A DNA stretch of 64,000 bases, taken from Octopus sinensis (lineage: Eukaryota). The position numbers and the translations under genes were made by a program. Below, piece by piece: positions 20,143 to 60,181 of the stretch. The notes under the pieces are model-generated. The model was not told the DNA's origin. It did no database searches and was given only the letters and a program-made list of their open reading frames with translations. The stretch is from positions 23,188,001 to 23,252,000 of the forward strand of contig NC_043014.1 of assembly GCF_006345805.1 (NCBI RefSeq). Direction: 5' to 3'. Numbering within the stretch: the stretch's first letter is position 1; each line of letters opens with the position of its first letter.

Positions 20143-20176
<34 letters not shown>

Positions 20177-20229: not shown

Positions 20230-20260
<31 letters not shown>

Positions 20261-21116: not shown

Positions 21117-22975
21117 TATACATACATACACACACACACGCATGCATCCCTACCCACATACATACACATACATACACACACACACATGCATCCCTACCCA
21201 CATACATACACACACACATACCTACACACACACACACATACATACATACATACTTAAGACATACTCACACACAGACATACACCCATACACTCACACTCAC
21301 ACACACACATATAGACGCACACGCACACATACACACACCTACATACATACATTACACTTGTACACACACACACTTACATTCATACATACACACACCTACA
21401 CAGCCATACCTTCACTCACACATACACACATACCTACATACACACACAAACACACACAGACACACCCCCATACATACATACACCTATACACACACGCCTA
21501 CACACATACATACACACATGCATAAACACACACACATACACATACGCACACACACATATACTTACACACATGCACACACACACACACATACATACATACA
21601 CCCATACACATACACACACACATACTTACATACTCCTATACACACATACATACACACAGACACACTCACACATACATACACACACATACTTACACACACA
21701 CTCACCTGCACGCACACACACATGCATGACACACACCCATACACTCACACTCATATACACGCACACGTACACGCACACACACTCCTACACTCCCATACAC
21801 ACACAAACGCATACACACACACACGCATACATACATATATTACATACGTACACACACACCTACATACACTCATACCCTCAACCATACATACATACACACA
21901 CACACAAACATACACGGACACACCCATACATACATACACACATACACCTATACACACCGCCTACACACCTATATACACACATATGCATACACACACATGT
22001 ACGCACATACACACACATAACGCTTACACACATGCACACACACACACATACATACGCACATGCATGCATGCACACGCGCACACCTACACGCAGGCATACA
22101 TGCATACACACACACGCACGCACACATACATACATACACACACATACATACACCCACACACATACACACATCAAGTACACACATACATACACACTCACAC
22201 ATACACACACACACACACTTACTCGCATGCACGGGCACACACATGCACATACACACACTTACACACATACACACACATACATACACACACATACACACGG
22301 ACATACATCCATACACACACATACTTACACACATTCAATTGGACACACTGACACCCAGACATACACACAGACACTCACACATCCACACACACATACTTAC
22401 ACACACACTCGCAGGTGCGCGCACATACATGCATGTGCACGTTCGTGCACTCATACCCGCATTCATGCACCACGCCCGTGGGTTTCGACTAGATCTCTTG
22501 TTTGTATCTGGGGCTGGCGTGTTTCTTGGGTTCTCTTACGCCTGTCTCCACGGGAGCACTTTTCCATCTTTCCCTCAGTTGCAGTTTGTTTCCTTAATAC
22601 CCCCACCTTTTGTACACACACGCACACACATACATACACCCACTCCCACGCACTCACACACACACATTTGCATATATATATATACATTACACTTACACAC
22701 ACTTCAAATTTACTTGTCATACATACAACTACGCACACTGGACACACTACTCTCAACACGCACATGGCACTTACATACGCCCCCCCCATTCCCTCCCCCC
22801 TCTTTTTACCACTGACCACTGACTTGCTACTGCTATGTCATACCTTCCGCCCTACCTACACACACATACAGACGCAACGCACTAACATATACATATAATT
22901 TTTTTATCTCGCCTTACACACACATACACACATGCACACGTACACACTCACACATACATACCCATTATTCTTCTA
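21117..22975. repeat. Degenerate (CA)/(CATA) low-complexity tract, about 1.9 kb
   Basis: Direct reading. Produces the 426- and 442-aa His/Thr/Tyr ORFs. Confidence 0.9.
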
Positions 22976-24265: not shown

Positions 24266-25640
24266 TCATAACACCTCGTTGTAAACAATGTTCCTTGTTT
24301 TTCCTTGTGGAGCATATACAAAAAGGTTTCTTTTGGTTCCTACTCTTGAGCAGCCAACATACAGTTGCCTATGCCAGAAGCAGGGCTCTTCCAAGAAAAG
24401 ACCAGCTACAGAGAGGGTTTGACCCTGAGATTTGTTAATGGACATGGCAAAGCTGACACGAAGGGGGAATTGCAGTCTTCTGAATGTAAATGGAATTTCT
24501 GCTCCTGATGGAGTAAGAGGAAATCTTGGAATAAAGACGTCATCACCTTTTCCACATCCAGAAAGAATGATTGCCTCGATAATGTGTGATATCATTTTCT
24601 TTATCACCAGTCATGTTCCATTGCAAAGTCTTGGTGATTCCAGATTGCGGAGTAGCATTACAGGAGTTCCAACTTTAAGTGGTTAATATGTGTGGAGGTA
24701 GTGAAAAGGGCTCCAGTGAATTGAGAAATTCAGGAGGATAGTTCACAACTTCATTTATATCTGGAATTGTATCAACAGACTTGTAAGTGTGTATAGTGCT
24801 GGGAAGAGAATGCATTAGCTGTTGATTACTTTTTTTAACAAGCGACGTTTTTGGGAGTTAATATTTTCTTTCACACAGCCAATTGTGATTTTGGTAGTTT
24901 TGTGTGAAGTTGGGAAAGACTTGTTTTTGAGTCATCTACAGAATTAACAACAGAGGAAAATTACCACACTTCCATTTGTCCTGCAGCATCAAGAGGCATC
25001 TTGCCTTCACCAAGTGTCAAAATGTCCTGTGCAAACTTTGTGGACATTTTGTCGCCGTGTAGCTGAGCTCTCATGTTAATGGTGAGACTAAAGATTGTAA
25101 CATGATGCCACAGGTAGTAGAAGATTTTAGGCATGCTTGAATTTCATCAGCTCTAGTGCCTTTCAGAATGACAAGAAGAGTTTGCCTGAAATCACCTGAC
25201 AACAGAAGTGTTACACCTCCCATTGGAGCCTGACAGTCTCGGATGTCTTTCAGGGCTCTATCTAATGCTTCCAAAGCTCCCTTGTGAGCCATAGTGTACT
25301 CATCCCAGACAATTACATAACAATTTTAAGTACTTGTCCTTGATCTGAGCTTTGTTGATGTTGCATGAAGGCATTTTGGATGCGCTAAATTGAGAGGGAG
25401 TTTAAAAGTTGAGTGTGCTGTCCTGCTACCGGGTAACAAAGTAGCTGCAATGCCAGAGGAGGCTACAACTACTGCAATGTCCTGATGCTACCTAACTTCT
25501 GCAAGGAGAAGCTTTGTAATAAATGTTTTTCCTGTCCCTCCAGGAGCATCGAGGAAGAAGATTCGTCCCTCGCGTTAGCGTACACTGTTAAGAATAGTTC
25601 TGTAGGCCTGCAGCTGGTCCAGAAGTAATTTAGGCTCATT
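24266..25640 (-). pseudogene. Helitron Pif1-family helicase remnant
   Basis: FLDAPGGTGKTF (Walker A), MAHKGALEALDRALKDIR..GGVTLLLSGDFRQTL, and RRLQFPLRVSFAMSINKSQGQTL..QLYVGCSRVG..TRNIVYNEVL*. Multiple frameshifts. Confidence 0.92.
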
Positions 25641-27811: not shown

Positions 27812-27823
<12 letters not shown>

Positions 27824-29253
27824 AAACAAGTAAAAAATAGAAAATGCTTAAATAATTTATAGTGAACATTTCAGTACCGGTTTCGGTCATTTTGAGACCT
27901 TTTCAACTGTACGATTAAATAATTAAATTTAGAAAAATTAGAAGAAAAGTTTTTTTAAAAGAATATTTCTATAGTAGTGTTCAGATTTAAGTGGCATTCT
28001 GCCTTTCTCTGACTCCCTTGTTTGCACTTGTGTGTTCGAGGTAGTTGTGAGCTCTTGGTAGGGTAGTAGAGAGAAGGCTGGTGAGGAAAGGGGGGTGGGA
28101 GAATCTGGGAGTGCCCTGATGGTCGTATTTGAATGGTCAGTGGCGGCTGGCAGTCTCAGTTCAATTCAGGAGAATATTTATGTTGACAGGCTTCTTTATA
28201 GAATTAGCGTAGGTGTTATACTAAAAAACATTAGTGACAAACTTAAGGGGTAGGGGGTGGAGAAGAAGAAGAAGAAGAAGAAGAAGAAGAAGGAGAAGGA
28301 GAAGATGACGATGATGGTGATGGTGGTGATGATTATGACGACGATGATGATGATAACGCTGATGATGAAGAAGAAGAAGAAGAAGGAGGAGGAGAAGGAG
28401 AAGATGGTGGTGATGATGGTGGCGATGATGATGATGCCGATGATGATGATAACGTTGATGATGAAGAAGAAGAGGAAGAAGAAGAAGAAGAAAAAACAGA
28501 GAGGGGAGAATATGAATGTAAATATAGCTATGAAGGGGCTGATTAGTAATGGATTCTATTGAGTGTAGTATTTGTGTGTGTATATATATTTTTTTCTTTA
28601 TTCTAAAGTTGAGGTATATTAATTGTTTGTCGTAGACCCGTTAAGAAGTGGCTTGTATTTTGTAATAAAGAGATTTTCTTTACTTATTCGTTGTCTCGAG
28701 GTTGTATCGTCCCTAAATTGGTAGAGGGGGAAATTCTGAAGTTTGGGTGTTTTTTTGTTGGCGCAAGTATCTATGTGTTGGCTAAAAGCTATTTTTCTGT
28801 TTTGGGGAATTTTTATCTGGGATCTGTGCAGGGCCATTCGTTTACGCAAACCATTTTTGTTTGGCCTATGTACTGCTCTTGACACCCGGAGCAGGTTAGT
28901 GAGTATATTAGGTTCTCCGAAGCACATGTGAAGTTGCTTTTCACTGTAAAACGTTGTCCCTGTTTGAAGGAGAACTCAGAACCCTCGATAGATAGTCGCA
29001 TATCCCGCAATTGGGTCTTCCACATTTTTTTACTGTCGGCTTCTGGTTGAAGAGTGAATTCGGGCTTGTGTAAGGAGATTTTCATGGATCTAGGCTGTCT
29101 TTGCTTTTTATGATCGTGTGGTTTGGAGGATGTGTTCATTCTGTGGTCTTTTTTAGGAGGGGTATGTTGTGGAGGATGGTGTCGAAGGCTTCGTTATTGA
29201 GAGGGTTGTGTGTGGAGATGTATGGTAGGCTTTTGGTTGTATGGTAAGGCTTT
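27812..29253 (-). mobile_element. 5'-truncated Penelope-like element (GIY-YIG plus 3' region with HHR)
   Basis: FTVKSNFTCASENLIYSLTCSGCQEQYIGQT-KNGLRKRMALHRSQI..SRQRISKENLFITKYKPLLN is a GIY-YIG domain. 3' end abuts (TA)n. Confidence 0.88.
27872..27909 (-). ncRNA. Minimal type I hammerhead ribozyme, U3:A8 core variant
   Basis: Minus strand: CAG TTGAAAA GGTC-tcaaaat-GACC GAAAC CG GTA CTG. Confidence 0.65.
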
Positions 29254-30378
29254 TGAAAAGCAACTTCACATGTGCTTCGGAGAACCTAATATACTCACTA
29301 ACCTGCCGGGTGTCAAGAGCAGTACATAGGCCAAACAAAAAATGGTTTGCGTAAACGAATGGCCCTGCACAGATCCCAGATAAAAATTCCCAAAACAGAA
29401 AAAATAGCTTTTAGCCAACACATAGATACTTGCGCCAACAAAAAAACACCAAACTTCAGAATTTTCCCCCTCTACCAATTTAGGGACGATAACCTCGAGA
29501 CAACGAATAAGTAAAGAAAATCTCTTTATTACAAAATACAAGCCACTTCTTAACGGGTCTACGACAAAACAATTAATATACCTCACTTTAGAATAAAAGA
29601 AAAAAAATATTATACACACACAAATACTACACTCAATAGAATCCATTACTAATCAGCCCCTTCATAGCTATATTTACATTCATATCCCCCTCTCTGTTTT
29701 TTCTTCTTCTTCTTCTTCCTCTTCTTCTTCATCATCAACGTTATCATCATCATCGGCATCATCATCATCGCCACCATCATCACCACCATCTTCTCCTTCT
29801 CTCCTCCTTTTCTTCTTCTTCTTCATCATCAGCGTTATCATCATCATCGTCGTCATAATCATCACCACCATCACCATCATCGTCATCTTCTCCTTCTCCT
29901 TCTTCTTCTTCTTCTTCTTCTTCTTCTTCTCCACCCCCTACCCCTTAAGTTTGTCACTAATGTTTTTAGTATAACACCTACGCTAATTCTATAAAGAAGC
30001 CTGTCAACATAAATATTCTCCTGAATTGAACTGAGACTGCAGCCGCCACTGACCATTCAAAATACGACCATCAGGGCACTCCCAGATTCTCCCACCCCCC
30101 TTTCCTCACCAGCCTTCTCTCTACTACCCTACCAAGAGCTCACAACTACCTCGAACACACAAGTGCAAACAAGGGAGTCAGAGAAGGCAGAATGCCACTT
30201 AAATCTGAACACTACTATAGAAATATTCTTTTAAAAAAAACTTTTCTTCTAATTTTTCTAAATTTAATTATTTAATCGTTACAGTTGAAAAGGTCTCAAA
30301 ATGACCGAAACCGGTACTGAAATGTTCACTATAAAATTATTTTGCATTTTCTATTTTTACTTGTTTTTTCATATATAT
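29254..30378 (+). mobile_element. Inverted duplicate of the 3' 1.13 kb of the same Penelope-like element
   Basis: Reverse complement of 27812-28943, differing mainly by 1-nt indels. Confidence 0.9.
30282..30319 (+). ncRNA. Minimal type I hammerhead ribozyme, U3:A8 core variant (second copy)
   Basis: Identical to the 27872-27909 motif. Stem I CAG/CTG, stem II GGTC/GACC, palindromic ACCGGT stem III, GUA triplet. Confidence 0.65.
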
Positions 30379-33930: not shown

Positions 33931-34880
33931 CTATCTGTCGGGTAGATTTGCAAGTTCCCTCTTCCAAAATCCACTTGTCCGTGAGGAAAAATATTCCTCC
34001 AGAACTATTCTGACCTCATCTACAGAATTCATATTTTTTCCATTCAAATGATTTTGAAGACTGCAGAATAAATGATAATCAAATGGGGCAATGTCTGATG
34101 AATATGGTGGGTGGGGCATTGTTTCCCATTCAAACTTCTCCAGCTTTTGGAATGTCATCCTTGCTGTATTTGGTCGAGCATTATCCTGATGGAAGAACAC
34201 CCTTCCGTCTTGAAACAAAAGATGGTCATAAGCCACTCAAGCTGTTTGCAGTAGGTCTCCTTTGTTATCATTTGGTTTGGATTTAAAAGTTTAAAGTGAA
34301 CTAGACCTTTCATATCCCACCAAACAGATAACAACACCTTATGTGGGTGGGGTGCTAGTGCTTCTTTTTCCCTTACCCACTGTCTTCGGTGCTTGACATT
34401 TTTATAGAGACACCATTTCTTGTCGCTAGTCACTATTCGGCCCAAAAAAGGTGCATTCGTGGGACCTGATAGCAAAGAAGAGCACACATTTACTTTCTGC
34501 ACATAATTATACTTGGAAAGTTTGTGGGAAACCCATTGACCTAATTTGTTGACTTTTCCGATGGCATGCAGGTGTTGATGATAGGTTGAATAACCAAATC
34601 CATGCTTCTCTGCTAGTTCCTCAATAGTTACGATGGGATTTTGTTCCATCAAGGTTTGCAGAACATCTTCATTGAGCTCTGCAGATCTTCCAGGACAAGG
34701 CTCATCTTCTAGGCTGTAGTTTCCGACTCGGAATTTCTGGAACCACTGTTGACACTGGCTTACGCTTATTGTCCGATGTTCCTATACTGCATTAATATTC
34801 CTCACACTTTCCGTTGCATTGTTGCCTTTATTAAACTCATAAAGCAAAATATGCCAATATGCTCCTTTGTCACTTGAAAA
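33931..34880 (-). pseudogene. Mariner (D,D34D) transposase remnant
   Basis: HILLYEFNKGNNATESVRNI, KLGQWVSHKL (WVPHEL-like), IVTSDKKW, KVLLSVWWD, FHQDNARP, HPPYSSDIAPFDYHLF. Confidence 0.93.
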
Positions 34881-42053: not shown

Positions 42054-43214
42054 TGTATATGAGAGGGAGATAGATATATGAATGTATATATATATGTAGT
42101 GAGCACATACATGTATACATCTGAATTCAACCCACAAAGAGTTTGTTGTTGTTGTTGATGATGAACCCCCGATCAAACAGACATGATGAAATGATTCCAT
42201 GGTGCCATTTTAGAATATATACAAACTCAAGTGCTTGATTCTTGCTTTAGTGATGGGATGCAAAACCAATAAATTTAGTCAGTGGTAAAGTTGAACCTTT
42301 TATATCATTCAGTATTCAGCAAATTTCATTATAAAATGACTATTTTTAAATCTCACAACGTGAGTTATTCAGCAACAGTACTTTGTAGTAAAGATTGTTT
42401 GCCAACATAACATGGCAGTCCTGGTTTAGGACGCATGTTGCTGTAATTTTCAAACAAGGGAATCTAGCACCCCTACGAAAATATAAGGACACAGATCATG
42501 TCATATAGCCAGCTGGAGACAATGTTTCCTGGGGCTAAATTACAGCAATATTCATCCTAAACTAGTACTGCCATGTTAAGATGGCAAACAATCTTTACTA
42601 CAAATTTCATTATCTTTTATCAGGAGTAATCTTTTTTTATCTCACTTTGTACCATTGTTCTGTTGATACTCTGCCTAGTAAAGACAAAGTGAAACAGACA
42701 AGAAAGCCAGATTCTTTTTCTGATAACACTGTTTTAAACAACATTATTGTGGTTTCAAGCATGGGTTCTTTTTTGTTGACTTGCAAATGATAAAAGTTAA
42801 GAGTTGAAGAAGAACTAATATCCTCATTATCCAATGTATTCTTTTCTAAGATGGTATGGTGTGATTTGAAGGAGATTTAGCTACAATTTCTAGCACCTAG
42901 GGGCATTTACAGCTTAATTAATATAAGGTTAAAGTAAGTTACTGTTAATATTCAAAATGTTGGCATATCTTTCTGCTTGTATGGTTTTTTTTTCTTTTAG
43001 TGACATAGCTGAGTAGTTCATGGAATAAAGCATTCACACATATATATACACATACATGAGGCATTTAACAAAATAGGAGCCTTTATGTGATCATGCAACC
43101 TGCTAGAAATTACAGCTAAATCTTCATCAATCAAACCCAAGTGTCTTTTTTAAAAAAGACACTAGTTCTAGATAAAACAAAAAAGACACAATGATCATGG
43201 GATCTTAGAGATAT

Positions 43215-49108: not shown

Positions 49109-49532
49109 TATATATATATATAATCATCATTATTACTATCATCAATTGATGTCTGTTTTCCATGCTGGTATGGGTTGTAGGGTTGCATGCCATTCCTAGT
49201 GCCAAGCACTTTATTGCATGCATTGGGTGCTTTATTTGTATCAATCATACCAGTGAGCTTGTCAAGTGACTTGCAAGACAGGAACTGAATGTATATCTCC
49301 AGCTAGCCAGGCATCTTCTCCTCGCAGTAATTTTGGGAGAAATGTGGGGGTAGAATCCTCAGGCACTTCCTTTGTAAGGACCTATAAGGCGCAACTGTCA
49401 TGATATTTTTTACTATTCCCAGGCTTGACCAACTGAGACTGGATATTATCAAACTTTCTTATATTGGTCTACTCCTACTTCTTAGCTCGGCATGTACACA
49501 CACACAATATGTGTGTGTATATATATATATAT

Positions 49533-52500
49533 ATCGAGTACAGTGAAGAATTCCGGGTAGAGGTTGGGGTCCACCAAGGTTCAGTCCTCAGCCCCCTCCT
49601 ATTTATCATAGTCCTCCAGGCAATAACGGAAGAATTTAAGACAGGATGCCCCTGGGAGCTCCTATATGCTGATGACCTTGCTCTAATTGCTGAGTCACTA
49701 TCAGAACTGGAGGAGAAGTTTCAGGTGTGGAAACAAGGATTAGAATCGAAGGGCCTTAGAATCAACCTAGCCAAAACCAAAGTCCTAATAAGTAGGAAGG
49801 TGGACCAACCACAAACGACTTCAGGTAGATGGCCCTGCTCGATCTGTAAAAAAGGTGTAGGTAGAAACTCTATAAGGTGCACCAAGTGTAAGCTATGGAC
49901 ACATAAGAGGTGCAGCAATGTCAAAGGAAGGCTAACTAAGAAAATAGTTTTTGTCTGTGGCAGATGCTCAGGAGAAATAAACACTGGAAATGTGCAGAGA
50001 CCAACTTCTACCACGTTCCAGGGAGACAAACTAGAAGTAGTTGATAGCTTCCGCTACCTAGGAGACCAAGTCAGTAGCGGGGGTGGTGTGCTGAAAGTGT
50101 AACTGCTAGAGTAAGAATAGCCTGGGCAAAGTTTAGAGAGCTCTTACCCCTGCTGGTGACAAAAGGCCTCTCGCTAAGAGTAAAAGGCAGACTATATGAT
50201 GCGTGTGTACGTAAAGCCATGCTACATGGTAGTGAAACATGGGCCGTGACAGCTGAGGATATGCGTAAGCTTGCAAGAAATGAAGCCAGTATGCTCCGAT
50301 GGATGTGTAATGTCAGTGTTCATAATCGTCAGAGTGTAAGTACTTTGAGAGAAAAGTTGAACCTAAGAAGTGTCAGTTGTGGTGTGCAAGAGAGACGGCT
50401 GCGCTGGTATGGTCATGTGACGAGAATGGCTGAAGATAGTTGTGTGCAAAAGTGCTACACCCTAGCAGTTGAGGGAACCTGTGGAAGAGGTAGACCCAGG
50501 AAAACCTGGGACGAGGTGGTGAAGCACGACCTTCGAACTTTAGGTCTCACCAAGGAAATGACTGAAGACCGAGTCCTATGGAAGTGTGCTGTGCATGAGA
50601 GGACCCGGCAGGACTAGTCAGGCCATATCCCGTGGCCCCTACCTGGGACGTAGTCGATCCACCTGTGCATACCTTCCTTCTTGTGACACTTGTGAAGACC
50701 TGCTGAGGCAAGTGAAAATCAATCAAAATAGATGAACATCAATGGAATTTGTATCTTTGTGGTACCAGTGCCTGTGGCACACAAGAAAACCATCCGAACG
50801 TGGCCGTAGCCAGTACCGCATCGACTGGCCTCCGTGCTGTGGGAACATGGTGGCACATAAAAACACCATCCGAAGACCCGGCAAGACTAGTCAGGTCATA
50901 ACCCGTGGGCCCTACCTGGGACGTAGTCAGTCCACCTGTACATACCTTCCTTCATGTGACACTTGTGAAGACCTGCTGAGGCAAGTGAAAATCAAAATCA
51001 AATCAAAACAAATCAAAATAGATGAACATCAATGGAATTTGTATCCTTGTGGTACCAGTGCCGGTGGCACACAAGAATCCATCCGAACGTGGCCGTAGTC
51101 AGTACCGCTTGTGGTACCAGTGCCGGTGGCACACAAGAATCCATCCGAACGTGGCCGTAGTCAGTACCGCTTGTGGTACCAGTGCCGGTGGCACACAAGA
51201 ATCCATCCGAACGTGGCCGTAGTCAGTACCGCATCACTGGCCATCGTGCTGTGGGCACATAACAAACACCATCCGTCGTGGCCGTTCGCCAGCCTCATCT
51301 AGCACCTGTGTCGGTGGCACATAAAAAGTAGTCAGTACCGCTTGTGGTACCAGTGCCGGTGGCACACAAGAATCCATCCGAACATGGCCGTAGTCAGTAC
51401 CGCATCACTGGCCATCGTGCTGTGAGCACATAACAAACACCATCCGGTCGTGGCCGTTCGCCAGCCTCATCTAGCACCTGTGTCGGTGGCACATAAAAAC
51501 ACCTTCCGAAGACCCGGCAAGACTAGTCAGGCCATAAACCATGGCCCCTACCTGGGACGTAGTCAGTCCACCTGTGTATACCTTCCTCCTTGTGATACTT
51601 GTGAAGGCCTGTTGAGGCAAGTGAAAATCAAAATCAAATCAAAACAAATCAAAATAGATGAACATCAATGGAATTTGTATCTTTGTGGTACCAGTGCCGG
51701 TGGCACACAAGAGAAAACCATCCGAAAGTGGCCGTAGCCAGTACCGCATCGACTGGTCTCCGTGCTGTGGGCACATGACAAACACCATCCGATCGTGGCC
51801 GTTCGCCAGCCTCATCTAGCACCTGTGTCGGTGGCACATAAAAACACCATCCGAAGACCCGGCAAGACTAGTCAGGCCATAACCCATGGCCCCTACCTGG
51901 GACGTAGTCAGTCCACCTGTGCATACCTTCCTTCTTGTGACACTTGTGAAGACCTGTTGAGGCAAGTGAAAATCAAATCAAAACAAATCAAAATAGATGA
52001 ACATCAATGGAATCTGTATCTTTGTGGTACCAGTGCCGGTGGCACACACTTTGTGGTACCAGTGCCGGTGGCACACAAGAGAACCATCCGAACGTGGCCG
52101 TAGCCAGTTCCGCATCGACCGGCCTCCGTGCTGTGGGCACGTAACAAACACCATCCGATCATGGCCGTTCGCCAGCCTCATCTGGCACCTGTGTCGGTGG
52201 CACATAAAAACACCTTCCGAAGACCCGGCAAGACTAGTCAGTCCACCTGTGCATACCTTCCTTCTTGTGACACTTGTGAAGACCGGTTGAGGCAAGTGAA
52301 AATCAAATCAAATCAAAATAGACAAAATAGATGAACATCAATGGAATTTGTATCCTGTGGTACCAGTGCCTGTGGAACACAAGAAATCCATCAGTGCGGT
52401 GGGCACATGACAAACACCATCCGATCGTGGCCGTTCGCCAGCCTCATCTAGCACCTGTGTCGGTGGCACATAAAAACACCATCCGAGCGTGGCCGTCTGC

Positions 52501-52838
52501 CAGCCTCGTCTGGCACCTGTATCGGTGGCACATAAAAACACCATCCGAGCGTGGCCGTCTGCCAGCCTCGTCTGGCACCTGTGTCAGTGGCACATAAAAA
52601 ACACCATCCGAGCGTGGCCGTTTGCCAGCCTCGTCTGGCACCTGTGTCAGTGGCACATAAAATCACCCACTACACTCTCGGAGTGGTTGGCGTTAGGAAG
52701 GGCATCCAGCTGTAGAAACACTGCCAGATCTGACTGGACTGGTGCAGCTTTCGGGCTCCCCAGACCCCAGTTGAACCGTCCAACCCATGCTAGCATGGAA
52801 AGCGGACGTTAAATGATGATGATGATGATGATGATGAT
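49533..52838 (+). mobile_element. 5'-truncated RTE LINE (RT C-half) with an expanded repetitive 3' UTR and (TGA)n tail
   Basis: VGVHQGSVLSPLLF, LLYADDL, INLAKTK, WPCSICKKGVG..C..C, FRYLGD, LRWYGHVTRM, RGRPRKTW, stop at 50617. Modular repeats 50620-52660. Confidence 0.93.
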
Positions 52839-52956
52839 ATATATACATACTCATATATATACACTCACACACACATATATATATATGTGTGTGTATATAT
52901 ATATATACATACACATATATATATACATACATATATGTATATATATATACATATAT

Positions 52957-53004
<48 letters not shown>

Positions 53005-53259
53005 CATATATATACATATACATATATATACATTTATATATATATACATATACATATATTTATACATATATATATATATATACATATATATATAGTGACG
53101 TATTTTTGCCATTTCAATATGGCTAACCCCTAAGGGTGGATGCTACTGTAGTTTTTAGCCCCAGGAGGACACACTCCTCCAGCTGGCCATAGACACACTA
53201 TCTGTGTCCTGTCAGTATTTGCAAAGGGAAGTCATCCTTCCCGTCTTCAACTTATGATA

Positions 53260-53304
53260 CACACGGACTCGAGTTTCGAGGTATTGACCTCTCGTCAGCG
53301 TGTG
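53260..53304 (-). ncRNA. Type I hammerhead ribozyme (array copy 1)
   Basis: CACACG CTGACGA GAGGT-CAAT-ACCTC GAAAC TCGA GTC CGTGTG: complete canonical core, 6-bp stem I, 5-bp stem II, GUC cleavage triplet. Confidence 0.93.
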
Positions 53305-53611
53305 ACAATCATAGTTGTCGCCGAGATTAGATTTCCTTCACAAATACTTATACTTTTTCCAGCGCCCACTGTCGCTGATATTGAAAAAGTGAAATCAAAC
53401 AATGATAAATATCAAAGTGAGTTATATACAGTAGCGGTAACACATCGTGACGTATTTTTGCCATTTCAATATGGCTAACCCCTAAGGGTGGATGCTACTG
53501 TAGTTTTTAGCCCCAGGAGGACACACTCCTCCAGCTGGCCATAGACACACTATCTGTGTCCTGTCAGTATTTGCAAAGGGAAGTCATCCTTCCCGTCTTC
53601 AACTTATGATA

Positions 53612-53656
53612 CACACGGACTCGAGTTTCGAGGTATTGACCTCTCGTCAGCGTGTG
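53612..53656 (-). ncRNA. Type I hammerhead ribozyme (array copy 2)
   Basis: Identical to copy 1. Confidence 0.93.
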
Positions 53657-53964
53657 ACAATCATAGTTGTCGCCGAGAATTAGATTTCCTTCACAAATAC
53701 TTATACTTTTTCCAGCGCCCACTGTCGCTGATATTGAAAAAGTGAAATCAAACAATGATAAATATCAAAGTGAGTTATATACAGTAGCGGTAACACATCG
53801 TGACGTATTTTTGCCATTTCAATATGGCTAACCCCTAAGGGTGGATGCTACTGTAGTTTTTAGCCCCAGGAGGACACACTCCTCCAGCTGGCCATAGACA
53901 CACTATCTGTGTCCTGTCAGTATTTGCAAAGGGAAGTCATCCTTCCCGTCTTCAACTTATGATA

Positions 53965-54009
53965 CACACGGACTCGAGTTTCGAGGTATTGACCTCTCGT
54001 CAGCGTGTG
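53965..54009 (-). ncRNA. Type I hammerhead ribozyme (array copy 3)
   Basis: Identical to copy 1. Confidence 0.93.
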
Positions 54010-54118
54010 ACAATCATAGTTGTCGCCGAGAATTAGATTTCCTTCACAAATACTTATACTTTTTCCAGCGCCCACTGTCGCTGATATTGAAAAAGTGAAA
54101 TCAAACAATGATAAATAT

Positions 54119-54161
54119 CACGCTGACGAGAAGTCAATACCTCGAAACTCGAGTCCGTGTG
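54119..54161 (+). ncRNA. Type I hammerhead ribozyme (array copy 4, at the inversion junction)
   Basis: Same motif, with stem I shortened to 4 bp by the junction and a G>A change at 54132 in stem II. Confidence 0.8.
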
Positions 54162-54469
54162 TATCATAAGTTGAAGATGGGAAGGATGACTTCCCTTTGC
54201 AAATACTGACAGGACACAGATAGTGTGTCTATGGCCAGCTGGAGGAGTGTGTCCTCCTGGGGCTAAAAACTACAGTAGCATCCACCCTTAGGGGTTAGCC
54301 ATATTGAAATGGCAAAAATACGTCACGATGTGTTACCGCTACTGTATATAACTCACTTTGATATTTATCATTGTTTGATTTCACTTTTTCAATATCAGCG
54401 ACAGTGGGCGCTGGAAAAAGTATAAGTATTTGTGAAGGAAATCTAATTCTCGGCGACAACTATGATTGT

Positions 54470-54514
54470 CACACGCTGACGAGAGGTCAATACCTCGAAA
54501 CTCGAGTCCGTGTG
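54470..54514 (+). ncRNA. Type I hammerhead ribozyme (array copy 5)
   Basis: Identical to copy 1. Predicted cleavage after 54508, exactly 353 nt from the copy-4 site after 54155. Confidence 0.93.
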
Positions 54515-54726
54515 TATCATAAGTTGAAGACGGGAAGGATGACTTCCCTTTGCAAATACTGACAGGACACAGATAGTGTGTCTATGGCCAGCTGGAGGAG
54601 TGTGTCCTCCTGGGGCTAAAAACTACAGTAGCATCCACCCTTAGGGGTTAGCCATATTGAAATGGCAAAAATACGTCACGATGTGTTACCGCTACTGTAT
54701 ATAACTCACTTTGATATTTATCATTG

Positions 54727-54787
<61 letters not shown>

Positions 54788-54936
54788 CATAGCGCGGAAA
54801 ACGGACGTTAAACGATGATGATGATGATGATACATATACATAGTAGTAGAATAGTAAAAAATACATACATACATACAAGCATACGTAATAATAATAATAA
54901 TAATAAGTGGATGTAAACACATGAACAAAATAAGAA

Positions 54937-56310
54937 AAAACACCTTCCAAAGACCCGGCAAGACTAGTCAGGCCATAAACCATGGCCCCTACCTGGGACG
55001 TAGTCAGTCCACCTGTGCATACCTTCCTCCTTGTGATACTTGTGAAGGCCTGTTGAGGCAAGTGAAAATCAAAATCAAATCAAAATAGATGAACATCAAT
55101 GGAATTTGTATCTTTGTGGTACCAGTGCCGGTGGCACACAAGAGAAAACCATCCGAAAGTGGCCGTAGCCAGTACCGCATCGACTGGCCTCCGTGCTGTG
55201 GGCACATGACAAACAGCATCCGATCGTGGCCGTTCGCCAGCCTCATCTAGCACCTGTGTCGGTGGCACATAAAAACACCATCCGAAGACCCGGCAAGACT
55301 AGTCAGGCCATAACCCATGGCCTGGGACGTAGTCAGTCCACCTGTGCATACCTTCCTTCTTGTGACACTTGTGAAGACCTGTTGAGGCAAGTGAAAATCA
55401 AATCAAAACAAATCAAAATAGATGAACATCAATGGAATCTGTATCTTTGTGGTACCAGTGACGGTGGCACACACTTTGTGGTACCAGTGCCGGTGGCACA
55501 CAAGAGAACCATCCGAACGTGGCCGTAGCCAGTTCCGCATCGACCGGCCTCCGTGCTGTGGGCACGTAACAAACACCATCCGATCATGGCCGTTCGCCAG
55601 CCTCATCTGGCACCTGTGTCGGTGGCACATAAAAACACCTTCCGAAGACCCGGCAAGACTAGTCAGTCCACCTGTGCATACCTTCCTTCTTGTGACACTT
55701 GTGAAGACCGGTTGAGGCAAGTGAAAATCAAATCAAATCAAAATAGACAAAATAGATGAACATCAATGGAATTTGTATCCTGTGGTACCAGTGCCTGTGG
55801 CACACAAGAAATCCATCAGTGCCGTAGTCAGTGCGGTGGGCACATGACAAACACCATCCGATCGTGGCCGTTCGCCAGCCTCATCTAGCACCTGTGTCGG
55901 TGGCACATAAAAACACCATCCGAGCGTGGCCGTCTGCCAGCCTCGTCTGGCACCTGTGTCGGTGGCACATAAAAACACCATCCGAGCGTGGCCATCTGCC
56001 AGCCTCGTCTGGCACCTGTGTCGGTGGCACATAAAAAACACCATCCGAGCGTGGCCGTCTGCCAGCCTCGTCTGGCACCTGTGTCGGTGGCACATAAAAA
56101 CACCATCCGAGCGTGGCCGTTTGCCAGCCTCGTCTGGCACCTGTGTCAGTGGCACATAAAATCACCCACTACACTCTCGAGTGGTTGGCGTTAGGAAGGG
56201 CATCCAGCTGTAGAAACACTGCCAGATCTGACTGGACTGGTGCAGCTTTCGGGCCCCCCAGACCCCAGTTGAACCGTCCAACCCATGCTAGCATGGAAAG
56301 CGGACGTTAA

Positions 56311-56342
<32 letters not shown>

Positions 56343-56544
56343 ATATATACATACTCATATATATACACTCACACACATATATATATGTGTGTGTATATAT
56401 ATATACATACACATATATATATACATACATATATGTATATATATATACATATATATATAATATATATATATATATACATACATATATATACATATACATA
56501 TATATACATTTATATATATATATACATATACATATATTTATACA

Positions 56545-56632
<88 letters not shown>

Positions 56633-56781
56633 CATAGCGCGGAAAACGGACGTTAAACGATGATGATGATGATGATACATATACATAGTAGTAGAATAGT
56701 AAAAAATACATACATACATACAAGCATACGTAATAATAATAATAATAATAAGTGGATGTAAACACATGAACAAAATAAGAA
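54937..56781 (+). repeat. Tandem direct duplicate of 51495-54936, lacking the HHR array
   Basis: Collinear RTE-UTR repeats, (TGA)n tail, TA/CA microsatellite and the downstream 'catagcgcggaaaacggacgttaaacg...gaacaaaataaga' block. Junction in an A-run. Confidence 0.88.
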
Positions 56782-57244
56782 TAAACAAAAACAAATTACA
56801 CGAATGTATATAAACAGAAGATATAAATATTACAGGCATTTCCCACCCACACACACACAGTAACTAAACATAGGTGCGCAAATGAGGACTCATACAATAG
56901 AAATACAAAATGGCTGACGGTTAGTAAGGAGAGACACACAAATAAGAAAGAAGAAAGCAAAGGACCACTGATGCGGTCACAGGAGTGTGACGAAAGAACT
57001 CTGACCGAAATAAGATTAAGTTTAATGTAAAAAATAAAAAATAAATATCACTGAAGCAAAGTAACACCAAATATATAGTGCGTGTGTTTTTATTGGCTAA
57101 ACTGGCAAAATGACCATTCCGAAATACAACAATATGTGTTTCAACACACGATTTCACATAAAAAAATTTGCACGTGACCTCGTGTGTACCATTAGCGATT
57201 TTTTTCCCTCTCTCTTCCCTTCTCTGGATCTTTCCTTCTCCTAT

Positions 57245-57279: not shown

Positions 57280-57812
57280 CCTCCTTCTTTCCTGAGCGTC
57301 CAATAATACTATATTTGTTCCACGTCCTCGCGTTGTTGTGTTTTTTTTTTGTGCTTTCTTGTTTGGATTAACTATATATATATATGTATATATATGTATG
57401 TATATAAATATAAATCTCTTATGATAAAAGGCAGATTTTCTCTGCCTCCAGAATCGTTCGTTTTTTATACAATTGTACAATATAGAAGTTCTTCACTTGG
57501 AATTTACCTATGATTTTTCCGAGTAGATTCCATTGGGTCATGGCATGTAAAGTTTTTTCAATTTGACCCCCAATTAAGCAAATATTCGAGAAAACTCAAT
57601 ATTTTACGATTTGCCTCTCTCATTTCAAGTGCTTCACTCCTTCCATTACCACTACACTTTCTCCTCCTTTCTCTTTGCAAGTGTGCAACAATTAAAGTGA
57701 AAGTATTTATATAACAGGGATGAGCCATTAATACTGATCATCCTTTTTGCTAGAGGAAGATCCGCTATGGTCTTATATGCTACACCACTGGTTTTCAATT
57801 CATATTAATCAA

Positions 57813-60181
57813 GGAACATGGTAAACGTTGGTCTCTGCACATTTTCAGTTTTTATTGCTCCTGAGCATCTGCCACAGACAAAAACTATTTTCCTAGTTAG
57901 CCTTCCTTTGACATTGCTACACCTCTTATGTGTCCATAGCTTGCACTTGGTGCACCTTATAGAGTTTCTACCTACACCTTTTTTATAGATCGAGCAGGGC
58001 CATCTACCTGAAAGCGTTTGTGACTTGTCTACATTCCTACTTATTAGGACTTTGGTTTTGGCTAGATTGATTCTGAGGCCCTTCAATTCTAGACCTTGCT
58101 TCCACACCTGAAACTTCTCCTCCAGTTCTGATTGTGACTCAGCAATTAGAGCAAGGTCATCAGCATAGAGGAGCTCCCAGGGGCATCCAGTCTTGAATTC
58201 CTCCGTTATTGCCTGGAGGACTATGATAAATAGGAGGGGACTGAGGACTGAACCTTGGTGGACCCCAACCTCTACCCTGAATTCTTCACTGTACTCGATG
58301 CCAACCCTCACCTTACTAGCAGCGTCTCTGTACATGGCTTGTACAGCTCTCACTAACCATTCATCTATCCCTACTTTCCTCATTGACCACCAGATAAGGG
58401 ATCGGGGGACCCTGTCGAAGGCTTTCTCCATATCAACAAAAGCCAGGTATAGGGGCTTGTCTTTGGCTAGGTATTTCTACTGCAGCTGTCTTACCATGAA
58501 AATAGCATCAGTAGTACTTTTCCCTGGCATGAACCCAAACTGCATCTGATCTAGCCTAACTCTCTCTCTAATTAGTTGGGCTATAACCCTCTCCATAACC
58601 TTCATTACCTGATCCAGCAGCTTGATACCCCCGTAGTTATTTGTATCTAGGGCGTCACCTTTACCTTTGTAGCAGCTGACTATTATGCTGCTACACCAGT
58701 CATTGGGTATGACTCCTTCGTGTATCACCTGGTTTACTATACGGGTGAGTAGGCTATAGCCGACACTACCAGATATTTTGAGCATCTCTGCAGTAATACC
58801 TGATGGGCCTGGGGCTTTCCCTGTTTTCATGCCTTAACTACTAAGGAACTGTCAACTTGGATTGCTGGTCCCTCTGTTGGGTCGACATTCGGCAGACTCT
58901 CTTTATCCCATTCATTTTCTTTATTCAGCAACCTTTCATAGTGGCGTCTCCAAACCTCTCTCTTTGCATCCTCATTTAGCGCAAGTGAACCGTCATCCTT
59001 GCGAACACATTTCTTTCCTACTACATCACGATTCTCTCTCACACACTGTCTTGCAACACGAAATACCTCAAGTCTTTCATCCAGGTCATTGGCAAATTTT
59101 TTCTTATCTGCTTCCCCTCTGGCTAAATACACCTGCCTCCTAGCTTCCCTTCTGGCAGTCTGATACACTTCCCTGCTACCACCATTCTTCCAGTCCTTCC
59201 AAGCCTGTTTCTTTTCTCTAATAGCCCTGTCAACAGTATTGTTCCACCACCACGTTATTTTGGGTCTTGTGGGGACTTTGCACCAGCCACAGATCTGGTC
59301 AGTGGCTTTCAGCAGGTTGTCCCTTAGAAGCGTCCAGTTGTCTTCTACCCCATGTGTAGCTATACCCCCTTCTATTTCGTCAAAGGCTTCAAGTAACATC
59401 TCTCTAAATCTCTGTCCATTTGCAGGGTCTTTAAGCTTCCAGACCCTTCTTCTCCATGTTGGTCGTCTTCTAGTCGTCCTCTTAGTCCTGATCCTAAAGT
59501 CACTAACTACCAGTCTATGTTGTGGGGTACATTCTTCGCCTGGGAAGGTTTTGGCATTTATAAGCAGCCATCTTTCCCTTTTTCTGGCAAGGATGTAGTC
59601 GATTTGGCTAGGATGCCGGCCCGATCGGTAGGTGACCAGGTGGCTTGTTTCCTGAAGTTAGTGTTGCAAACCATAAGACTATTCGCATCGCAGAACTCCA
59701 GCAGCCTGGTTCCCTCCTTGTTGCGGGAACCATAACCGTAGCCTCCATGCATGCCATGGAAGCCCCCAGCACATCGTCCAACATGCCAATTGAAGTCACC
59801 AGCCACAAAGAGAAGGTCCCTGTCGTTCGTCAATGAGGTGGTCTGCAGTAGGGTGTCATAGAAACAGTCTTTCCGTCCATCAGGTAGCCCTGGCTGAGGG
59901 GCATAGGCCGATATAATAGTTGCTAAACTATGATGGAGCACTAATCTAATCTTCAATATTTTGTCACATACTCTGACTACCTCGATTACCTTATCTACCC
60001 ATTTTTCGGCGATAAGCATGCCCACACCCCCGACCCCATCAGTATTCCCAGCCCAGAAAATCTTGTACCTCTGTCCTTTGCCTGTGAGGAACCTAGCAGA
60101 ACCTCCTCTCCACCTCACTTCTTGAATGCAGCATATATCAACACACCTGCGTTCAAGCAATTCGACAATCTCGCCAGACAT
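57813..60181 (-). mobile_element. RTE LINE (APE endonuclease plus RT N-half), truncated at both ends
   Basis: VDICCIQEVRW, ISAYAPQ, VAGDFN, LLEFCDAN, KTGKAPGPSG, YKGKGD, QFGFMPGKSTTDAIF, DMEKAFDRVP, GVHQGSVLSP, LLYADDL. Confidence 0.93.

What the first reader, a model, noticed from the sequence alone, without database searches (positions are those of the whole stretch)
53095..54727. Candidate cephalopod retrozyme: 353-nt hammerhead monomer in a near-identical multimeric array
Seen: about 4.6 tandem copies of a 353-bp unit, only three differences found, each full unit with one canonical type I HHR. Stem I extends through an internal loop (CAACT-ATGAT-tgt-CACACG / CGTGTG-t-ATCAT-a-AGTTG) opposite a CAAU loop II. 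The rest of the unit has many hairpins (GGGAAG/CTTCCC, GACACA/TGTGTC, GGAGGA/TCCTCC, GCCAT/ATGGC, CAGCG/CGCTG). No RT or transposase sequence is present. Known: non-LTR retrozymes in other metazoans are tandem monomers of a few hundred bp with type I HHRs that give abundant circRNAs, and stem I/loop II contacts accelerate natural HHRs. Inference: transcription of either strand yields a 353-nt (or 352-nt) monomer that can circularise and be copied by a borrowed RT. I do not know of this family being described.
Basis: partly seen in the sequence, partly recalled or inferred. Interest (0 to 1): 0.92.

Follow-up and report, generated by a model that had tools for sequence, protein, structure and literature searches.

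The report
Octopus hammerhead retrozyme, inverted twin array
A 1.6-kb block of a non-coding 353-bp repeat, each copy carrying a self-cleaving hammerhead ribozyme, was recently inserted into an (AT)n microsatellite of an octopus-like genome as two back-to-back inverted arrays; it is a new family of a known kind of element (animal "retrozymes"), and how it was inserted points to Penelope-like machinery.

Summary
The repeat and its ribozyme are real. The unit is 353 bp, 42.5% GC and non-coding, and only three differences separate the copies. Each full unit holds a complete type I hammerhead (Rfam Hammerhead_1, 32.2 bits against a curated cut-off of 34). No motif this good appeared in 200 shuffled windows.

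The block is not one 4.6-copy tandem array. It is two inverted arms. Arm 53095-54120 has 2.9 units with the ribozyme on the minus strand. Arm 54121-54727 has 1.7 units with it on the plus strand. The arms are joined head-to-head with 2 nt of microhomology, and both 3' ends face outward.

The block interrupts an (AT)n tract that is uninterrupted in a tandem paralogue 3.4 kb downstream, so it is a recent insertion. The monomer RNA is strongly self-paired (z about -6). Helix III is an 8-nt palindrome, which predicts cleavage as a double hammerhead.

All sequence-testable features of metazoan non-LTR retrozymes are met. Inverted, 5'-truncated copies in (TA)n are what is described for Penelope-like element (PLE) insertions, and a GIY-YIG-bearing remnant in the same window has the same layout.

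The host is octopus-like. I found no published description of this family. Expression, circularisation, cleavage and genome-wide copy number could not be tested. Verdict: a new member of a known kind, of moderate interest.

The parts
53095..54120 (-). Left arm: 2.9 units in ribozyme-sense orientation on the minus strand. Read 5' to 3' it covers unit positions 204-353, a full 353-nt unit, a 352-nt unit, then positions 1-171. Its 5' end is at the centre of the block and its 3' end abuts (AT)n.
   Evidence: TRF finds period 353, 2.9 copies, 99% matches. BLAST of the unit and arm-to-unit alignment.
54121..54727 (+). Right arm: 1.72 units in ribozyme-sense orientation on the plus strand. It covers unit positions 319-353, a full 353-nt unit, then positions 1-219/220. 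Its 5' end is at the centre and its 3' end abuts (AT)n.
   Evidence: Inverted repeat 53399-54007 / 54119-54727, 609 nt, 99.7% identical. Arm alignment.
54119..54120 (.). Inversion junction. The dinucleotide CA can be assigned to either arm (2-nt microhomology). The structure is not a perfect palindrome: 111 nt lie between the longest inverted arms.
   Evidence: BLAST placements overlap at 54119-54120. Arm spacing. Sequence.
53965..54009 (-). Complete type I hammerhead. Cleavage falls after the C at 53971.
   Evidence: Rfam RF00163, 32.2 bits, E 1.3e-5. My own scanner finds helices I/II/III of 6/5/2 bp. GUC positions.
53612..53656 (-). Complete type I hammerhead. Cleavage falls after the C at 53618.
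53260..53304 (-). Complete type I hammerhead. Cleavage falls after the C at 53266.
54470..54514 (+). Complete type I hammerhead. Cleavage falls after the C at 54508.
54117..54160 (+). Truncated hammerhead at the inversion point. Helix I is reduced to CACG/CGUG with no stem I extension, and helix II has a G-to-A change at 54132 that gives an A.C mismatch. It is probably impaired.
   Evidence: Rfam 24.2 bits. Missed by the structure scanner. Variant list.
53618..53970 (-). Predicted 353-nt monomer RNA between two intact cleavage sites. A second monomer of 352 nt spans 53266-53617 on the same strand.
   Evidence: Cleavage positions. The linear fold is -120.2 kcal/mol, z -6.4. The circular fold is -115.1 kcal/mol, 63% paired, z -5.8.
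54156..54508 (+). Reference 353-nt unit used in all analyses. It runs from just after a cleavage site to the next cleavage site. Its release from a plus-strand transcript would need the crippled ribozyme at 54117-54160.
52875..53094 (.). Left part of the interrupted (AT)n target tract, just downstream of the (ATG)n tail of a LINE 3' end (52813-52838).
   Evidence: TRF. Empty-site alignment. O. vulgaris LINE copy ending in (ATG)n.
54728..54791 (.). Right part of the interrupted (AT)n target tract. Base 54728 is a C that matches neither the unit nor the repeat.
56341..56636 (.). Empty-site paralogue: an uninterrupted (AT)n in the tandem duplicate of the flanks. Copy A is 51495-54942 with the insert. 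Copy B is 54936-56787 without it. The two copies are 96.6-98.6% identical.
   Evidence: Self-BLAST. Base-by-base alignment across the junction.
42347..42450 (-). Locus 2, left arm: a diverged relative of unit positions 111-212, 5'-truncated, with no ribozyme.
   Evidence: BLAST E 1.4e-4. Inverted pair 42382-42449 / 42537-42604, 90% complementary.
42486..42588 (+). Locus 2, right arm: a diverged relative (71% identity) of unit positions 56-161. Weaker similarity continues to about position 224 at 42668. It is 5'-truncated, lies head-to-head with the left arm, and has no ribozyme.
   Evidence: BLAST E 3.5e-5. The local alignment scores 135, against a mean of 59 and a maximum of 97 for shuffles.

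Best explanation
This is a young insertion of a non-autonomous, non-coding retroelement of the metazoan non-LTR retrozyme class, in an octopus-like genome.

Shown:
- A 353-nt unit carries one complete type I hammerhead.
- The unit is present as two multimeric arms in opposite orientation.
- The block lies inside an (AT)n tract that is intact in a paralogue.

Inferred life cycle:
1. An array is transcribed into an oligomeric RNA.
2. Neighbouring ribozymes pair through the palindromic helix III (ACUCGAGU) to form double hammerheads and cut after GUC.
3. [quoted passage not shown]
4. The long stem I (positions 1-18 paired with 296-318) holds those ends together, so a host ligase can close the circle.
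5. In the monomeric circle helix III is too weak for efficient re-cleavage, so the circle persists.

Inferred integration:
1. An endonuclease with (TA)n preference, most likely the GIY-YIG endonuclease of a Penelope-like element, broke the microsatellite.
2. Both exposed 3'-OH ends primed reverse transcription on ribozyme-sense RNA. The RNA was either a circle copied round and round or an uncleaved multimer.
3. This gave one cDNA of 2.9 units and one of 1.7 units. The two start at different unit positions (171 and 219/220).
4. The cDNAs run toward each other and were joined at their 5'-truncated ends through a 2-nt microhomology.
For: Ribozyme:
- All core nucleotides and the three helices are present. 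Rfam gives 32.2 bits with E 1.3e-5.
- The only such motifs in 64 kb are these, and none appeared in 200 shuffled windows.

Retrozyme anatomy:
- The period is 353 bp and GC is 42.5%.
- There are no ORFs of note.
- The ribozyme-sense monomer folds at -120.2 kcal/mol (z -6.4), against -99.3 (z -3.8) for the complement.
- The circular form folds at -115.1 kcal/mol, z -5.8.
- These values match the description of ~170-400 nt, low-GC, highly self-paired tandem repeats with type I hammerheads in PMC7229834.

Double hammerhead:
- The helix III hairpin has 0.0 kcal/mol, whereas the duplex has -12.1.
- A two-ribozyme cofold gives -53.9 kcal/mol with canonical helices II and III, against 2 x -24.6 for misfolded monomers.

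Insertion:
- The flanks are colinear with an uninterrupted paralogous (AT)n.
- The copies differ at 3 sites in 1633 nt, whereas the flanking duplicates differ by 1.4-3.4%.

Orientation test:
- In ribozyme sense both arms have their 3' ends at the flanks and their 5' ends at the centre. Target-primed reverse transcription of ribozyme-sense RNA from both sides of a break predicts exactly this.

PLE signature:
- PMC8557442 describes inverted 5'-truncated copies, partial tandems, (TA)n targets and one-sided 30-40-bp tails for PLE insertions.
- A GIY-YIG-bearing remnant in this window (27812-28943 / 29254-30378) is also head-to-head with 3' ends outward and sits at an (AT)n edge.
- A diverged relative of the unit at 42.35-42.6 kb is also a head-to-head, 5'-truncated pair.
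- PLE-like RT/GIY-YIG remnants occur in the window, with relatives in O. sinensis and O. bimaculoides.
- 31 young PLE families are annotated in O. vulgaris (PMC13282606).
Against: - The Rfam score is 1.8 bits below the curated gathering score.
- No RNA evidence of any kind is available. Cleavage, circles and expression are all untested.
- Only one intact locus was seen. No other copy of the unit turned up in 54 kb sampled from three octopus genomes, in the protein-handle searches, or in the metagenome and viral scans. A dispersed family is therefore inferred from one fresh locus plus one diverged relic.
- The PLE domain calls in the window are sub-threshold in Pfam (GIY-YIG E 0.004-0.013; the RT is not recognised).
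- The 3' regions of those PLE-like remnants share no sequence with the unit, so no specific autonomous partner is identified.
- No target-site duplication can be read in a microsatellite.
- Near-identical 353-bp repeats and a 609-bp inverted repeat are hard to assemble. The scaffold has at least one gap (16924-17023), so copy number and the junction need long-read confirmation.
Confidence: 0.75

Rival explanations
1. The block is not an independent retrozyme family. It is a severely 5'-truncated insertion of an autonomous Penelope-like element, of which only the ribozyme-bearing terminal repeat (pLTR) was copied, in the usual tandem and inverted PLE fashion.
For: - pLTRs of canonical and Hydra-clade PLEs carry hammerheads, and PLE insertions are usually 5'-truncated, partly tandem and often inverted (PMC8557442).
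- Xenopus retrozymes are sister to pLTRs (2026 preprint).
- PLEs with ribozymes in tandem are mentioned for the axolotl.
- The (TA)n target and the head-to-head layout fit.
Against: - The repeat period equals one ribozyme-to-ribozyme unit of 353 nt. The template was therefore itself a 353-nt circle or multimer, not a ~3-kb element whose partial tandem would have a kilobase period.
- No RT or GIY-YIG ORF lies within or next to the block. The nearest RT fragments belong to an AP-endonuclease-type LINE.
- The PLE-like remnants in the window and the sampled octopus PLE-like loci share no sequence with the unit and have no hammerhead.
- The ribozyme is a canonical type I with an extended stem I. 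PMC7229834 contrasts this with the minimal variants of most PLEs.
Confidence: 0.12
2. It is a small ribozyme-bearing satellite that arose and expanded at the DNA level by slippage or unequal crossing-over. A later DNA rearrangement inverted part of it. No RNA intermediate was involved.
For: - Hammerhead repeats were first described as satellite DNA in newts.
- The 2026 preprint proposes local amplification by unequal crossover after a founding insertion.
- The surrounding region is itself a tandem duplication rich in sub-repeats.
Against: - The paralogous empty site shows the whole block arrived as an insertion into (AT)n.
- The two arms start and end at unrelated unit positions, and both 3' ends face outward. 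A fold-back or inversion of a pre-existing array would carry flank along or leave the arms in register.
- The right flank continues the empty-site sequence exactly.
- A second, diverged locus has the same head-to-head layout.
Confidence: 0.07
3. The inverted arm and the copy numbers are assembly artefacts, for example from a chimeric palindromic long read or the collapse or mis-join of near-identical repeats. The true locus would be a simple direct array.
For: - The copies are over 99% identical, and a 609-bp inverted repeat is difficult to assemble.
- The scaffold contains an N gap at 16924-17023.
Against: - The junction is asymmetric, with 111 nt between the arms and arms that begin at unit positions 204 and 319. 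It is not the perfect zero-spacer palindrome typical of missed-adapter reads.
- The right arm has two private variants and the left arm one.
- Both flanks agree with the empty-site paralogue.
- An older inverted pair with 97.4% identical arms elsewhere in the window shows that such structures are biological in this genome.
Confidence: 0.06

Closest known systems
Metazoan non-LTR retrozymes (Cervera & de la Pena 2020, PMC7229834), for example the ~350-nt mussel and axolotl families
   Same: - One type I hammerhead per non-coding monomer of a few hundred bp.
- Multimeric arrangement, GC below 45%, and a highly self-paired monomer RNA.
[quoted passage not shown]
- Co-occurrence with Penelope-like elements in the host genome.
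   Different: - This is a new sequence family in a cephalopod, a group not covered in that paper or in the 2026 vertebrate survey.
- The array is split into two inverted arms inside an (AT)n tract, with an empty-site paralogue. Neither retrozyme paper describes this architecture: "inverted" and "microsatellite" each occur zero times in PMC7229834.
- RNA circles have not been shown for this family.
Penelope-like element insertions and their pLTR hammerheads (Arkhipova; Craig et al. 2021, PMC8557442), especially (TA)n-targeting clades such as Hydra, Neptune and Naiad
   Same: - An inverted 5'-truncated copy lies head-to-head with a partly tandem copy.
- The insertion is in a (TA)n microsatellite.
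- The two ends differ by a ~48-nt extension, reminiscent of the one-sided 30-40-bp tail.
- A hammerhead is present in the repeated part.
   Different: - There is no RT or GIY-YIG ORF.
- The tandem period is a 353-nt ribozyme unit rather than a whole element.
- There is no sequence similarity to the PLE-like remnants available here.
Newt/axolotl satellite 2 hammerheads and other dimer-dependent hammerheads (HHR_Amex1; ASBVd)
   Same: A very short helix III is capped by a palindromic loop. Two ribozymes in a multimeric transcript can therefore form one extended helix III, here an 8-bp ACUCGAGU duplex. This predicts cleavage as a dimer and stable monomers.
   Different: Helix III here has two base pairs rather than one, and the rest of the unit is unrelated. 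The dimer dependence is predicted from folding energies only.

Membership tests
Hammerhead ribozyme, type I (Rfam RF00163) | Conserved catalytic core CUGANGA ... GAAA ... UH with a cleavage site | tested here: met
   The sequence CUGACGA-G...C-GAAA-C UCGA G-UC is present in four complete copies.
Hammerhead ribozyme, type I (Rfam RF00163) | Three helices around the core, with helix I open (type I topology) | tested here: met
   Helix I is 6 bp and extends to 16 bp through an internal loop. Helix II is 5 bp with a CAAU loop. Helix III is 2 bp with a UCGA loop.
Hammerhead ribozyme, type I (Rfam RF00163) | Score at or above Rfam's curated gathering threshold (34 bits) | tested here: not met
   The score is 32.2 bits, so nothing is reported at gathering thresholds. 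The E-value is still 1.3e-5 for the 2-kb search and 4.2e-4 for the whole window.
Hammerhead ribozyme, type I (Rfam RF00163) | Stem I / loop II tertiary contact elements | tested here: inconclusive
   An internal loop (UGU/U) lies 6 bp from the core, opposite a loop II whose AAUA matches the Rfam consensus. Whether they actually make contact cannot be judged from sequence.
Hammerhead ribozyme, type I (Rfam RF00163) | Self-cleavage activity | not testable with these tools
   This needs in vitro transcription of monomer and dimer constructs.
Metazoan non-LTR retrozyme | Type I hammerhead once per monomer of ~150-450 bp, with at least two monomers in tandem | tested here: met
   The unit is 353 bp. 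There are 2.9 direct copies on one arm and 1.7 on the other.
Metazoan non-LTR retrozyme | Non-coding, with no LTR/PBS/PPT, and low GC (below 45-50%) | tested here: met
   The longest stop-free stretch is 66 codons. GC is 42.5%. No terminal repeats exist other than the unit itself.
Metazoan non-LTR retrozyme | Highly self-paired monomer RNA | tested here: met
   Linear fold -120.2 kcal/mol, z -6.4. Circular fold -115.1 kcal/mol, 63% paired, z -5.8.
Metazoan non-LTR retrozyme | Dispersed multi-copy family in the genome | tested here: inconclusive
   The window holds one fresh locus and one diverged head-to-head relic. Nothing was found in 54 kb of other octopus sequence or in the searchable collections. 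Cephalopod genomes cannot be searched by DNA with these tools.
Metazoan non-LTR retrozyme | Expression as abundant linear and circular monomer RNAs | not testable with these tools
   No transcriptome data can be searched by nucleotide sequence here.
Metazoan non-LTR retrozyme | Co-existence with Penelope-like elements in the host | tested here: met
   RT-like and GIY-YIG-like remnants are present in the window, though sub-threshold in Pfam. One relative has a C-terminal GIY-YIG domain at the Pfam cut-off, and there are O. sinensis and O. bimaculoides homologues. PLE families are annotated in O. vulgaris.
Penelope-like element (pLTR of an autonomous copy) | Terminal repeat contiguous with an ORF encoding a PLE reverse transcriptase and GIY-YIG endonuclease | tested here: not met
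   No such ORF lies in or next to 53095-54727. The neighbouring RT fragments are of the AP-endonuclease LINE type. The unit is unrelated to the 3' regions of the window's PLE-like remnants.
Penelope-like element (insertion signature only) | 5'-truncated inverted copy head-to-head with a partly tandem copy, and a microsatellite (TA)n target | tested here: met
   The literature description is in PMC8557442.

The most novel reading that the evidence does not exclude
The locus is a nearly unmutated record of how a retrozyme integrates. Two cDNAs were copied from 353-nt ribozyme-sense circles or multimers. They were primed from both sides of a Penelope-type endonuclease break in (TA)n and joined head-to-head.

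If other insertions of the family show the same pattern, this would be the first insertion-site-level evidence that PLE machinery mobilises animal retrozymes. So far that link rests on co-occurrence and on pLTR similarity.

As a by-product, read-through transcription of the two arms would fold into a ~609-bp near-perfect double-stranded RNA. In a cephalopod this would be an obvious substrate for ADAR editing or small-RNA production against the family.
Probability: 0.3. Interest if true: 0.65.

Novelty: new member of a known kind. Interest (0 to 1): 0.45.

Why it matters
Animal retrozymes are thought to spread through small circular RNAs copied by a borrowed reverse transcriptase. The partner enzyme and the integration mechanism are still inferred only from co-occurrence with Penelope-like elements and from similarity to their terminal repeats.

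This locus adds a cephalopod family to the catalogue. More usefully, it is a very young insertion whose boundaries can be read exactly against an empty paralogous site. Its layout is the one described for Penelope-like insertions: multimeric cDNA, two inverted 5'-truncated arms with 3' ends outward, and a (TA)n target.

That turns "which machinery mobilises retrozymes?" into a question that a genome-wide survey of this one family's junctions could answer. The predicted dimer-dependent ribozyme also gives a simple in vitro test. Otherwise the element is an ordinary member of a well-described class.

Tried and rejected
1. Rfam at gathering thresholds returned nothing. The permissive scan was needed.
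2. The many miRNA-family matches (mir-297, mir-1277 and others) are microsatellite artefacts. The MIR4208 match at 53958-54169 is simply the hairpin formed by the centre of the inverted repeat. I rejected all of these as genes.
3. I tried short spurious ORFs of the unit as handles to find other genomic or transcriptome copies. The exact look-up found none, and the homology search with the 66-codon stretch found no candidate.
4. The ribozyme core pattern with this helix III found nothing in JGI metagenome contigs or in IMG/VR.
5. I tried to find the autonomous partner. I pulled relatives of the window's RT/GIY-YIG remnant and fetched O. sinensis, O. bimaculoides and O. vulgaris loci. These contained no copy of the unit and no hammerhead. 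The sample is only 54 kb, so this says little.
6. Pfam does not recognise the RT of those remnants or of their full-length relatives, and a PDB sequence search found nothing. The PLE assignment therefore rests on weak GIY-YIG matches, domain order and motifs read by eye.
7. The 3' regions of the PLE-like remnants show no similarity to the unit or to each other.
8. Full-text searches for the ribozyme sequence and for cephalopod retrozymes found no prior description.
9. I considered a defined 3' end for the family, because the right arm ends at unit position 220 and the locus-2 homology fades near position 224. I left this as a lead only, because the coincidence is weak.
Full report
**Observation**

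The sequence at 53095-54727 is a repeat of a 353-bp unit bounded on both sides by (AT)n. Tandem Repeats Finder reports only 2.9 direct copies, at 53095-54120. The remaining 607 bases (54121-54727) are the reverse complement of the same unit.

I took as reference the stretch between two cleavage sites (54156-54508, plus strand) and aligned both arms to it.
- The left arm, read on the minus strand, covers unit positions 204-353, a full 353-nt unit, a 352-nt unit, then positions 1-171.
- The right arm, read on the plus strand, covers positions 319-353, a full unit, then positions 1-219/220.
- The dinucleotide CA at 54119-54120 can be assigned to either arm.

Only three differences exist among the copies. 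One copy has a T instead of C at unit position 23 (54178). There is a G-to-A change at 54132. One A is deleted in one copy, which makes it 352 nt. The block is two arrays joined head-to-head.

**The ribozyme**

With permissive thresholds, Rfam's Hammerhead_1 model matches 53260-53304, 53612-53656 and 53965-54009 on the minus strand and 54470-54514 on the plus strand. Each scores 32.2 bits (E 1.3e-5 in a 2-kb search, 4.2e-4 in the whole window). This is just under the curated cut-off of 34, which is why the default scan is empty.

The core is complete: CUGACGA, GAAA and GUC, followed by the cleavage site.
- Helix I is 6 bp (CACACG/CGUGUG).
- Helix II is 5 bp with a CAAU loop.
- Helix III is only A-U and C-G, closed by UCGA.

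My own structure-aware scanner finds exactly these four motifs in the 64-kb window. It finds none as good in 200 dinucleotide-shuffled windows, and a loose version occurs 0.025 times per window.

A fifth copy at the inversion point (54117-54160, 24.2 bits) has lost the 5' strand of stem I beyond four pairs and carries a helix II mismatch. It is probably crippled.

Consequently a minus-strand transcript contains three intact ribozymes. It would release one 353-nt monomer (53970 to 53618) and one 352-nt monomer (53617 to 53266). A plus-strand transcript could release its monomer only with the help of the crippled copy.

**The RNA**

The unit has no coding potential. The longest ORF is 74 aa and the longest stop-free stretch is 66 codons on either strand. 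GC is 42.5%.

The ribozyme-sense monomer folds to -120.2 kcal/mol (z = -6.4 against dinucleotide shuffles). Its complement reaches -99.3 (z = -3.8). As a circle the monomer still reaches -115.1 kcal/mol with 63% of bases paired (z = -5.8).

In these folds positions 1-18 pair with positions 296-318. Stem I of the ribozyme therefore closes the whole molecule and holds the two cleavage ends side by side.

Helix III together with its loop is the 8-nt palindrome ACUCGAGU. As a hairpin it has no predicted stability (0.0 kcal/mol). As a duplex between two ribozymes it gives -12.1 kcal/mol. Two ribozyme segments cofold at -53.9 kcal/mol with canonical helices II and III, whereas a single segment misfolds at -24.6.

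This is the behaviour known for newt and axolotl repeats, which cleave as dimers (PMC7229834). It predicts cleavage in multimeric transcripts and stability of the monomer. That prediction is an inference from folding energies, not a result.

**It is an insertion, and a young one**

The flanks belong to a tandem duplication. Copy A spans 51495-54942 and contains the block. Copy B spans 54936-56787 and lacks it. The copies are 96.6-98.6% identical.

With the block removed, A aligns to B straight through an uninterrupted (AT)n tract. The block therefore arrived after the duplication, and it is much younger: 3 differences in 1633 nt against 1.4-3.4% between the flanks.

The (AT)n tract lies just downstream of the (ATG)n tail of a LINE 3' end. 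The comparison with an O. vulgaris copy shows this. No target-site duplication can be read in a microsatellite.

**Orientation as a test of mechanism**

In ribozyme sense, both arms have their 3' ends at the flanks and their 5' ends at the centre. Both are 5'-truncated at unrelated unit positions (204 and 319). They start at different unit positions next to the flanks (171 and 219/220).

This is what is expected if both 3'-OH ends of a break in (AT)n primed reverse transcription on ribozyme-sense RNA and the two cDNAs were then joined.
- Each cDNA is longer than one unit, so the template was a circle copied repeatedly or an uncleaved multimer.
- A DNA fold-back would have carried flank with it, but the right flank continues the empty site exactly.
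- A missed-adapter artefact would give a perfect palindrome. Here 111 nt separate the arms, and each arm has private variants.

**The Penelope connection**

Craig et al. (PMC8557442) describe the following features for Penelope-like elements:
- frequent 5' truncation and partial tandems;
- an inverted 5'-truncated copy lying head-to-head;
- a one-sided 30-40-bp tail;
- (TA)n as a preferred target for several clades;
- for the Hydra clade, which occurs in molluscs, universal canonical hammerheads.

The window offers its own comparators.
- An inverted pair at 27812-28943 / 29254-30378 (arms 97.4% identical) carries GIY-YIG-like ORF ends at its centre, has its 3' ends outward, and abuts (AT)29.
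- RT-like plus GIY-YIG-like remnants at 16923-18993 and 11344-11709 lie upstream of long (TA)n tracts.
- A 71%-identical relative of the unit at 42347-42450 / 42486-42588 is again a head-to-head, 5'-truncated pair without a ribozyme.

The domain evidence for these remnants is weak. Pfam gives GIY-YIG at E 0.004-0.013 and does not recognise the RT. One full-length relative reaches the GIY-YIG cut-off at its C terminus, and the closest homologues are O. sinensis and O. bimaculoides proteins.

Their 3' regions share nothing with the unit. Three sampled octopus loci contain neither the unit nor any hammerhead. No specific partner is therefore identified.

**Host and prior knowledge**

The window's LINE fragment is 81% identical to an O. 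vulgaris protein and 65-67% identical to O. bimaculoides proteins. "Cephalopod" is supported, but the species is not determined.

- Non-LTR retrozymes are described for corals, a mussel, the axolotl and many other animals (PMC7229834).
- A 2026 preprint argues from vertebrate data that they derive from PLE terminal repeats.
- The giant squid genome paper lists 235 Hammerhead_1 hits without analysing them.
- A 2026 O. vulgaris repeat annotation lists 31 young PLE families but no ribozyme element.
- Full-text searches for the ribozyme sequence found nothing.
- Neither retrozyme paper mentions inverted arrays or microsatellite targets.

**Verdict**

This is a real, recently inserted member of the retrozyme class, and a new family as far as I could check. 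Its two-armed inverted architecture in (AT)n reads like a Penelope-type integration event.

Confidence in the class assignment is high, about 0.85. Confidence in the specific integration mechanism is moderate, about 0.55. Activity, circles and genome-wide distribution are untested. Interest is moderate. The class is known and its presence in cephalopods is unsurprising, but the locus gives a clean, testable handle on how retrozymes are mobilised.

Noticed in passing
window 27812-28943 / 29254-30378: This is a 1.14-kb inverted repeat (97.4% identical, 310-nt spacer). GIY-YIG-like ORF ends with a CxxC between GIY and YIG lie at its centre (28816-29193 minus strand, 29229-29511 plus strand), and their 3' ends point outward. 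Each arm contains mirrored (AGA)n(GAT)n(GAA)n microsatellites. The left edge abuts (AT)29 and the right edge is followed by ATATATAT. It looks like a Penelope-type head-to-head insertion.
   Followed up: partly
window 16923-18993 (+) and 11344-11709 (-): These are remnants of a retroelement with RT-like motifs (FDIASFYPSI, YRDD) followed by a C-terminal GIY-YIG-like domain that lacks the CxxC finger. Long (TA)n tracts lie downstream (19861-20287 and 10792-10872). The closest homologue is an O. sinensis protein annotated 'myb-like protein I' (73% identity). Full-length relatives of ~700 aa carry Pfam PF26215. They may belong to the Hydra clade of PLEs, but Pfam support is sub-threshold.
   Followed up: partly
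window 42347-42450 (-) / 42486-42668 (+): This is an older, diverged (about 62-71% identity) head-to-head pair related to unit positions ~56-224. It has no hammerhead. Its homology fades near unit position 224, close to where the right arm of the main array ends (position 220), which may hint at a preferred 3' end.
   Followed up: partly
window 53095, 54728, 30370: All three outward junctions of the inverted insertions read ...C followed by (A)TATAT: ACGTCAC|TATATA, CATTGTC|ATATAT and TTTTTTC|ATATAT. The C at 54728 matches neither the unit nor the microsatellite. This may be a cleavage or priming signature, or it may be coincidence.
   Followed up: no
window 51495-54942 vs 54936-56787: This is a ~1.85-kb tandem duplication made of ~330-360-bp sub-repeats, which themselves contain 62-bp repeats. 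It corresponds to the 3' region of a LINE that ends in (ATG)n. A second ~35-nt copy of the LINE 3' end plus (ATG)n follows the (AT)n tract at about 54795-54830 and 56640-56675.
   Followed up: partly
window 49464-50617 (+), 57805-60181 (-): These are fragments of a non-LTR retrotransposon with AP-endonuclease, RT and PHD-finger domains. They are 81% identical to an O. vulgaris protein and flank the repeat region in opposite orientations.
   Followed up: partly
window 24269-25325 (-): A PIF1-like helicase fragment (Pfam PIF1, E 3.6e-19) sits beside a weak UvrD_C match. It may be a Helitron remnant.
   Followed up: no
window 34155-34652 (-): A mariner-type transposase fragment (Pfam Transposase_1, E 1.6e-16).
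   Followed up: no
window 16924-17023: A run of 100 N marks a scaffold gap inside the PLE-like remnant. It is a reminder that repeat structures in this assembly need long-read confirmation.
   Followed up: no
window 21120-22408 and many other sites: Very long (AC)n/(ACAT)n and (TA)n microsatellites occur here. They generate dozens of spurious Rfam miRNA-family matches (mir-297, mir-1277, mir-3149, mir-466).
   Followed up: yes
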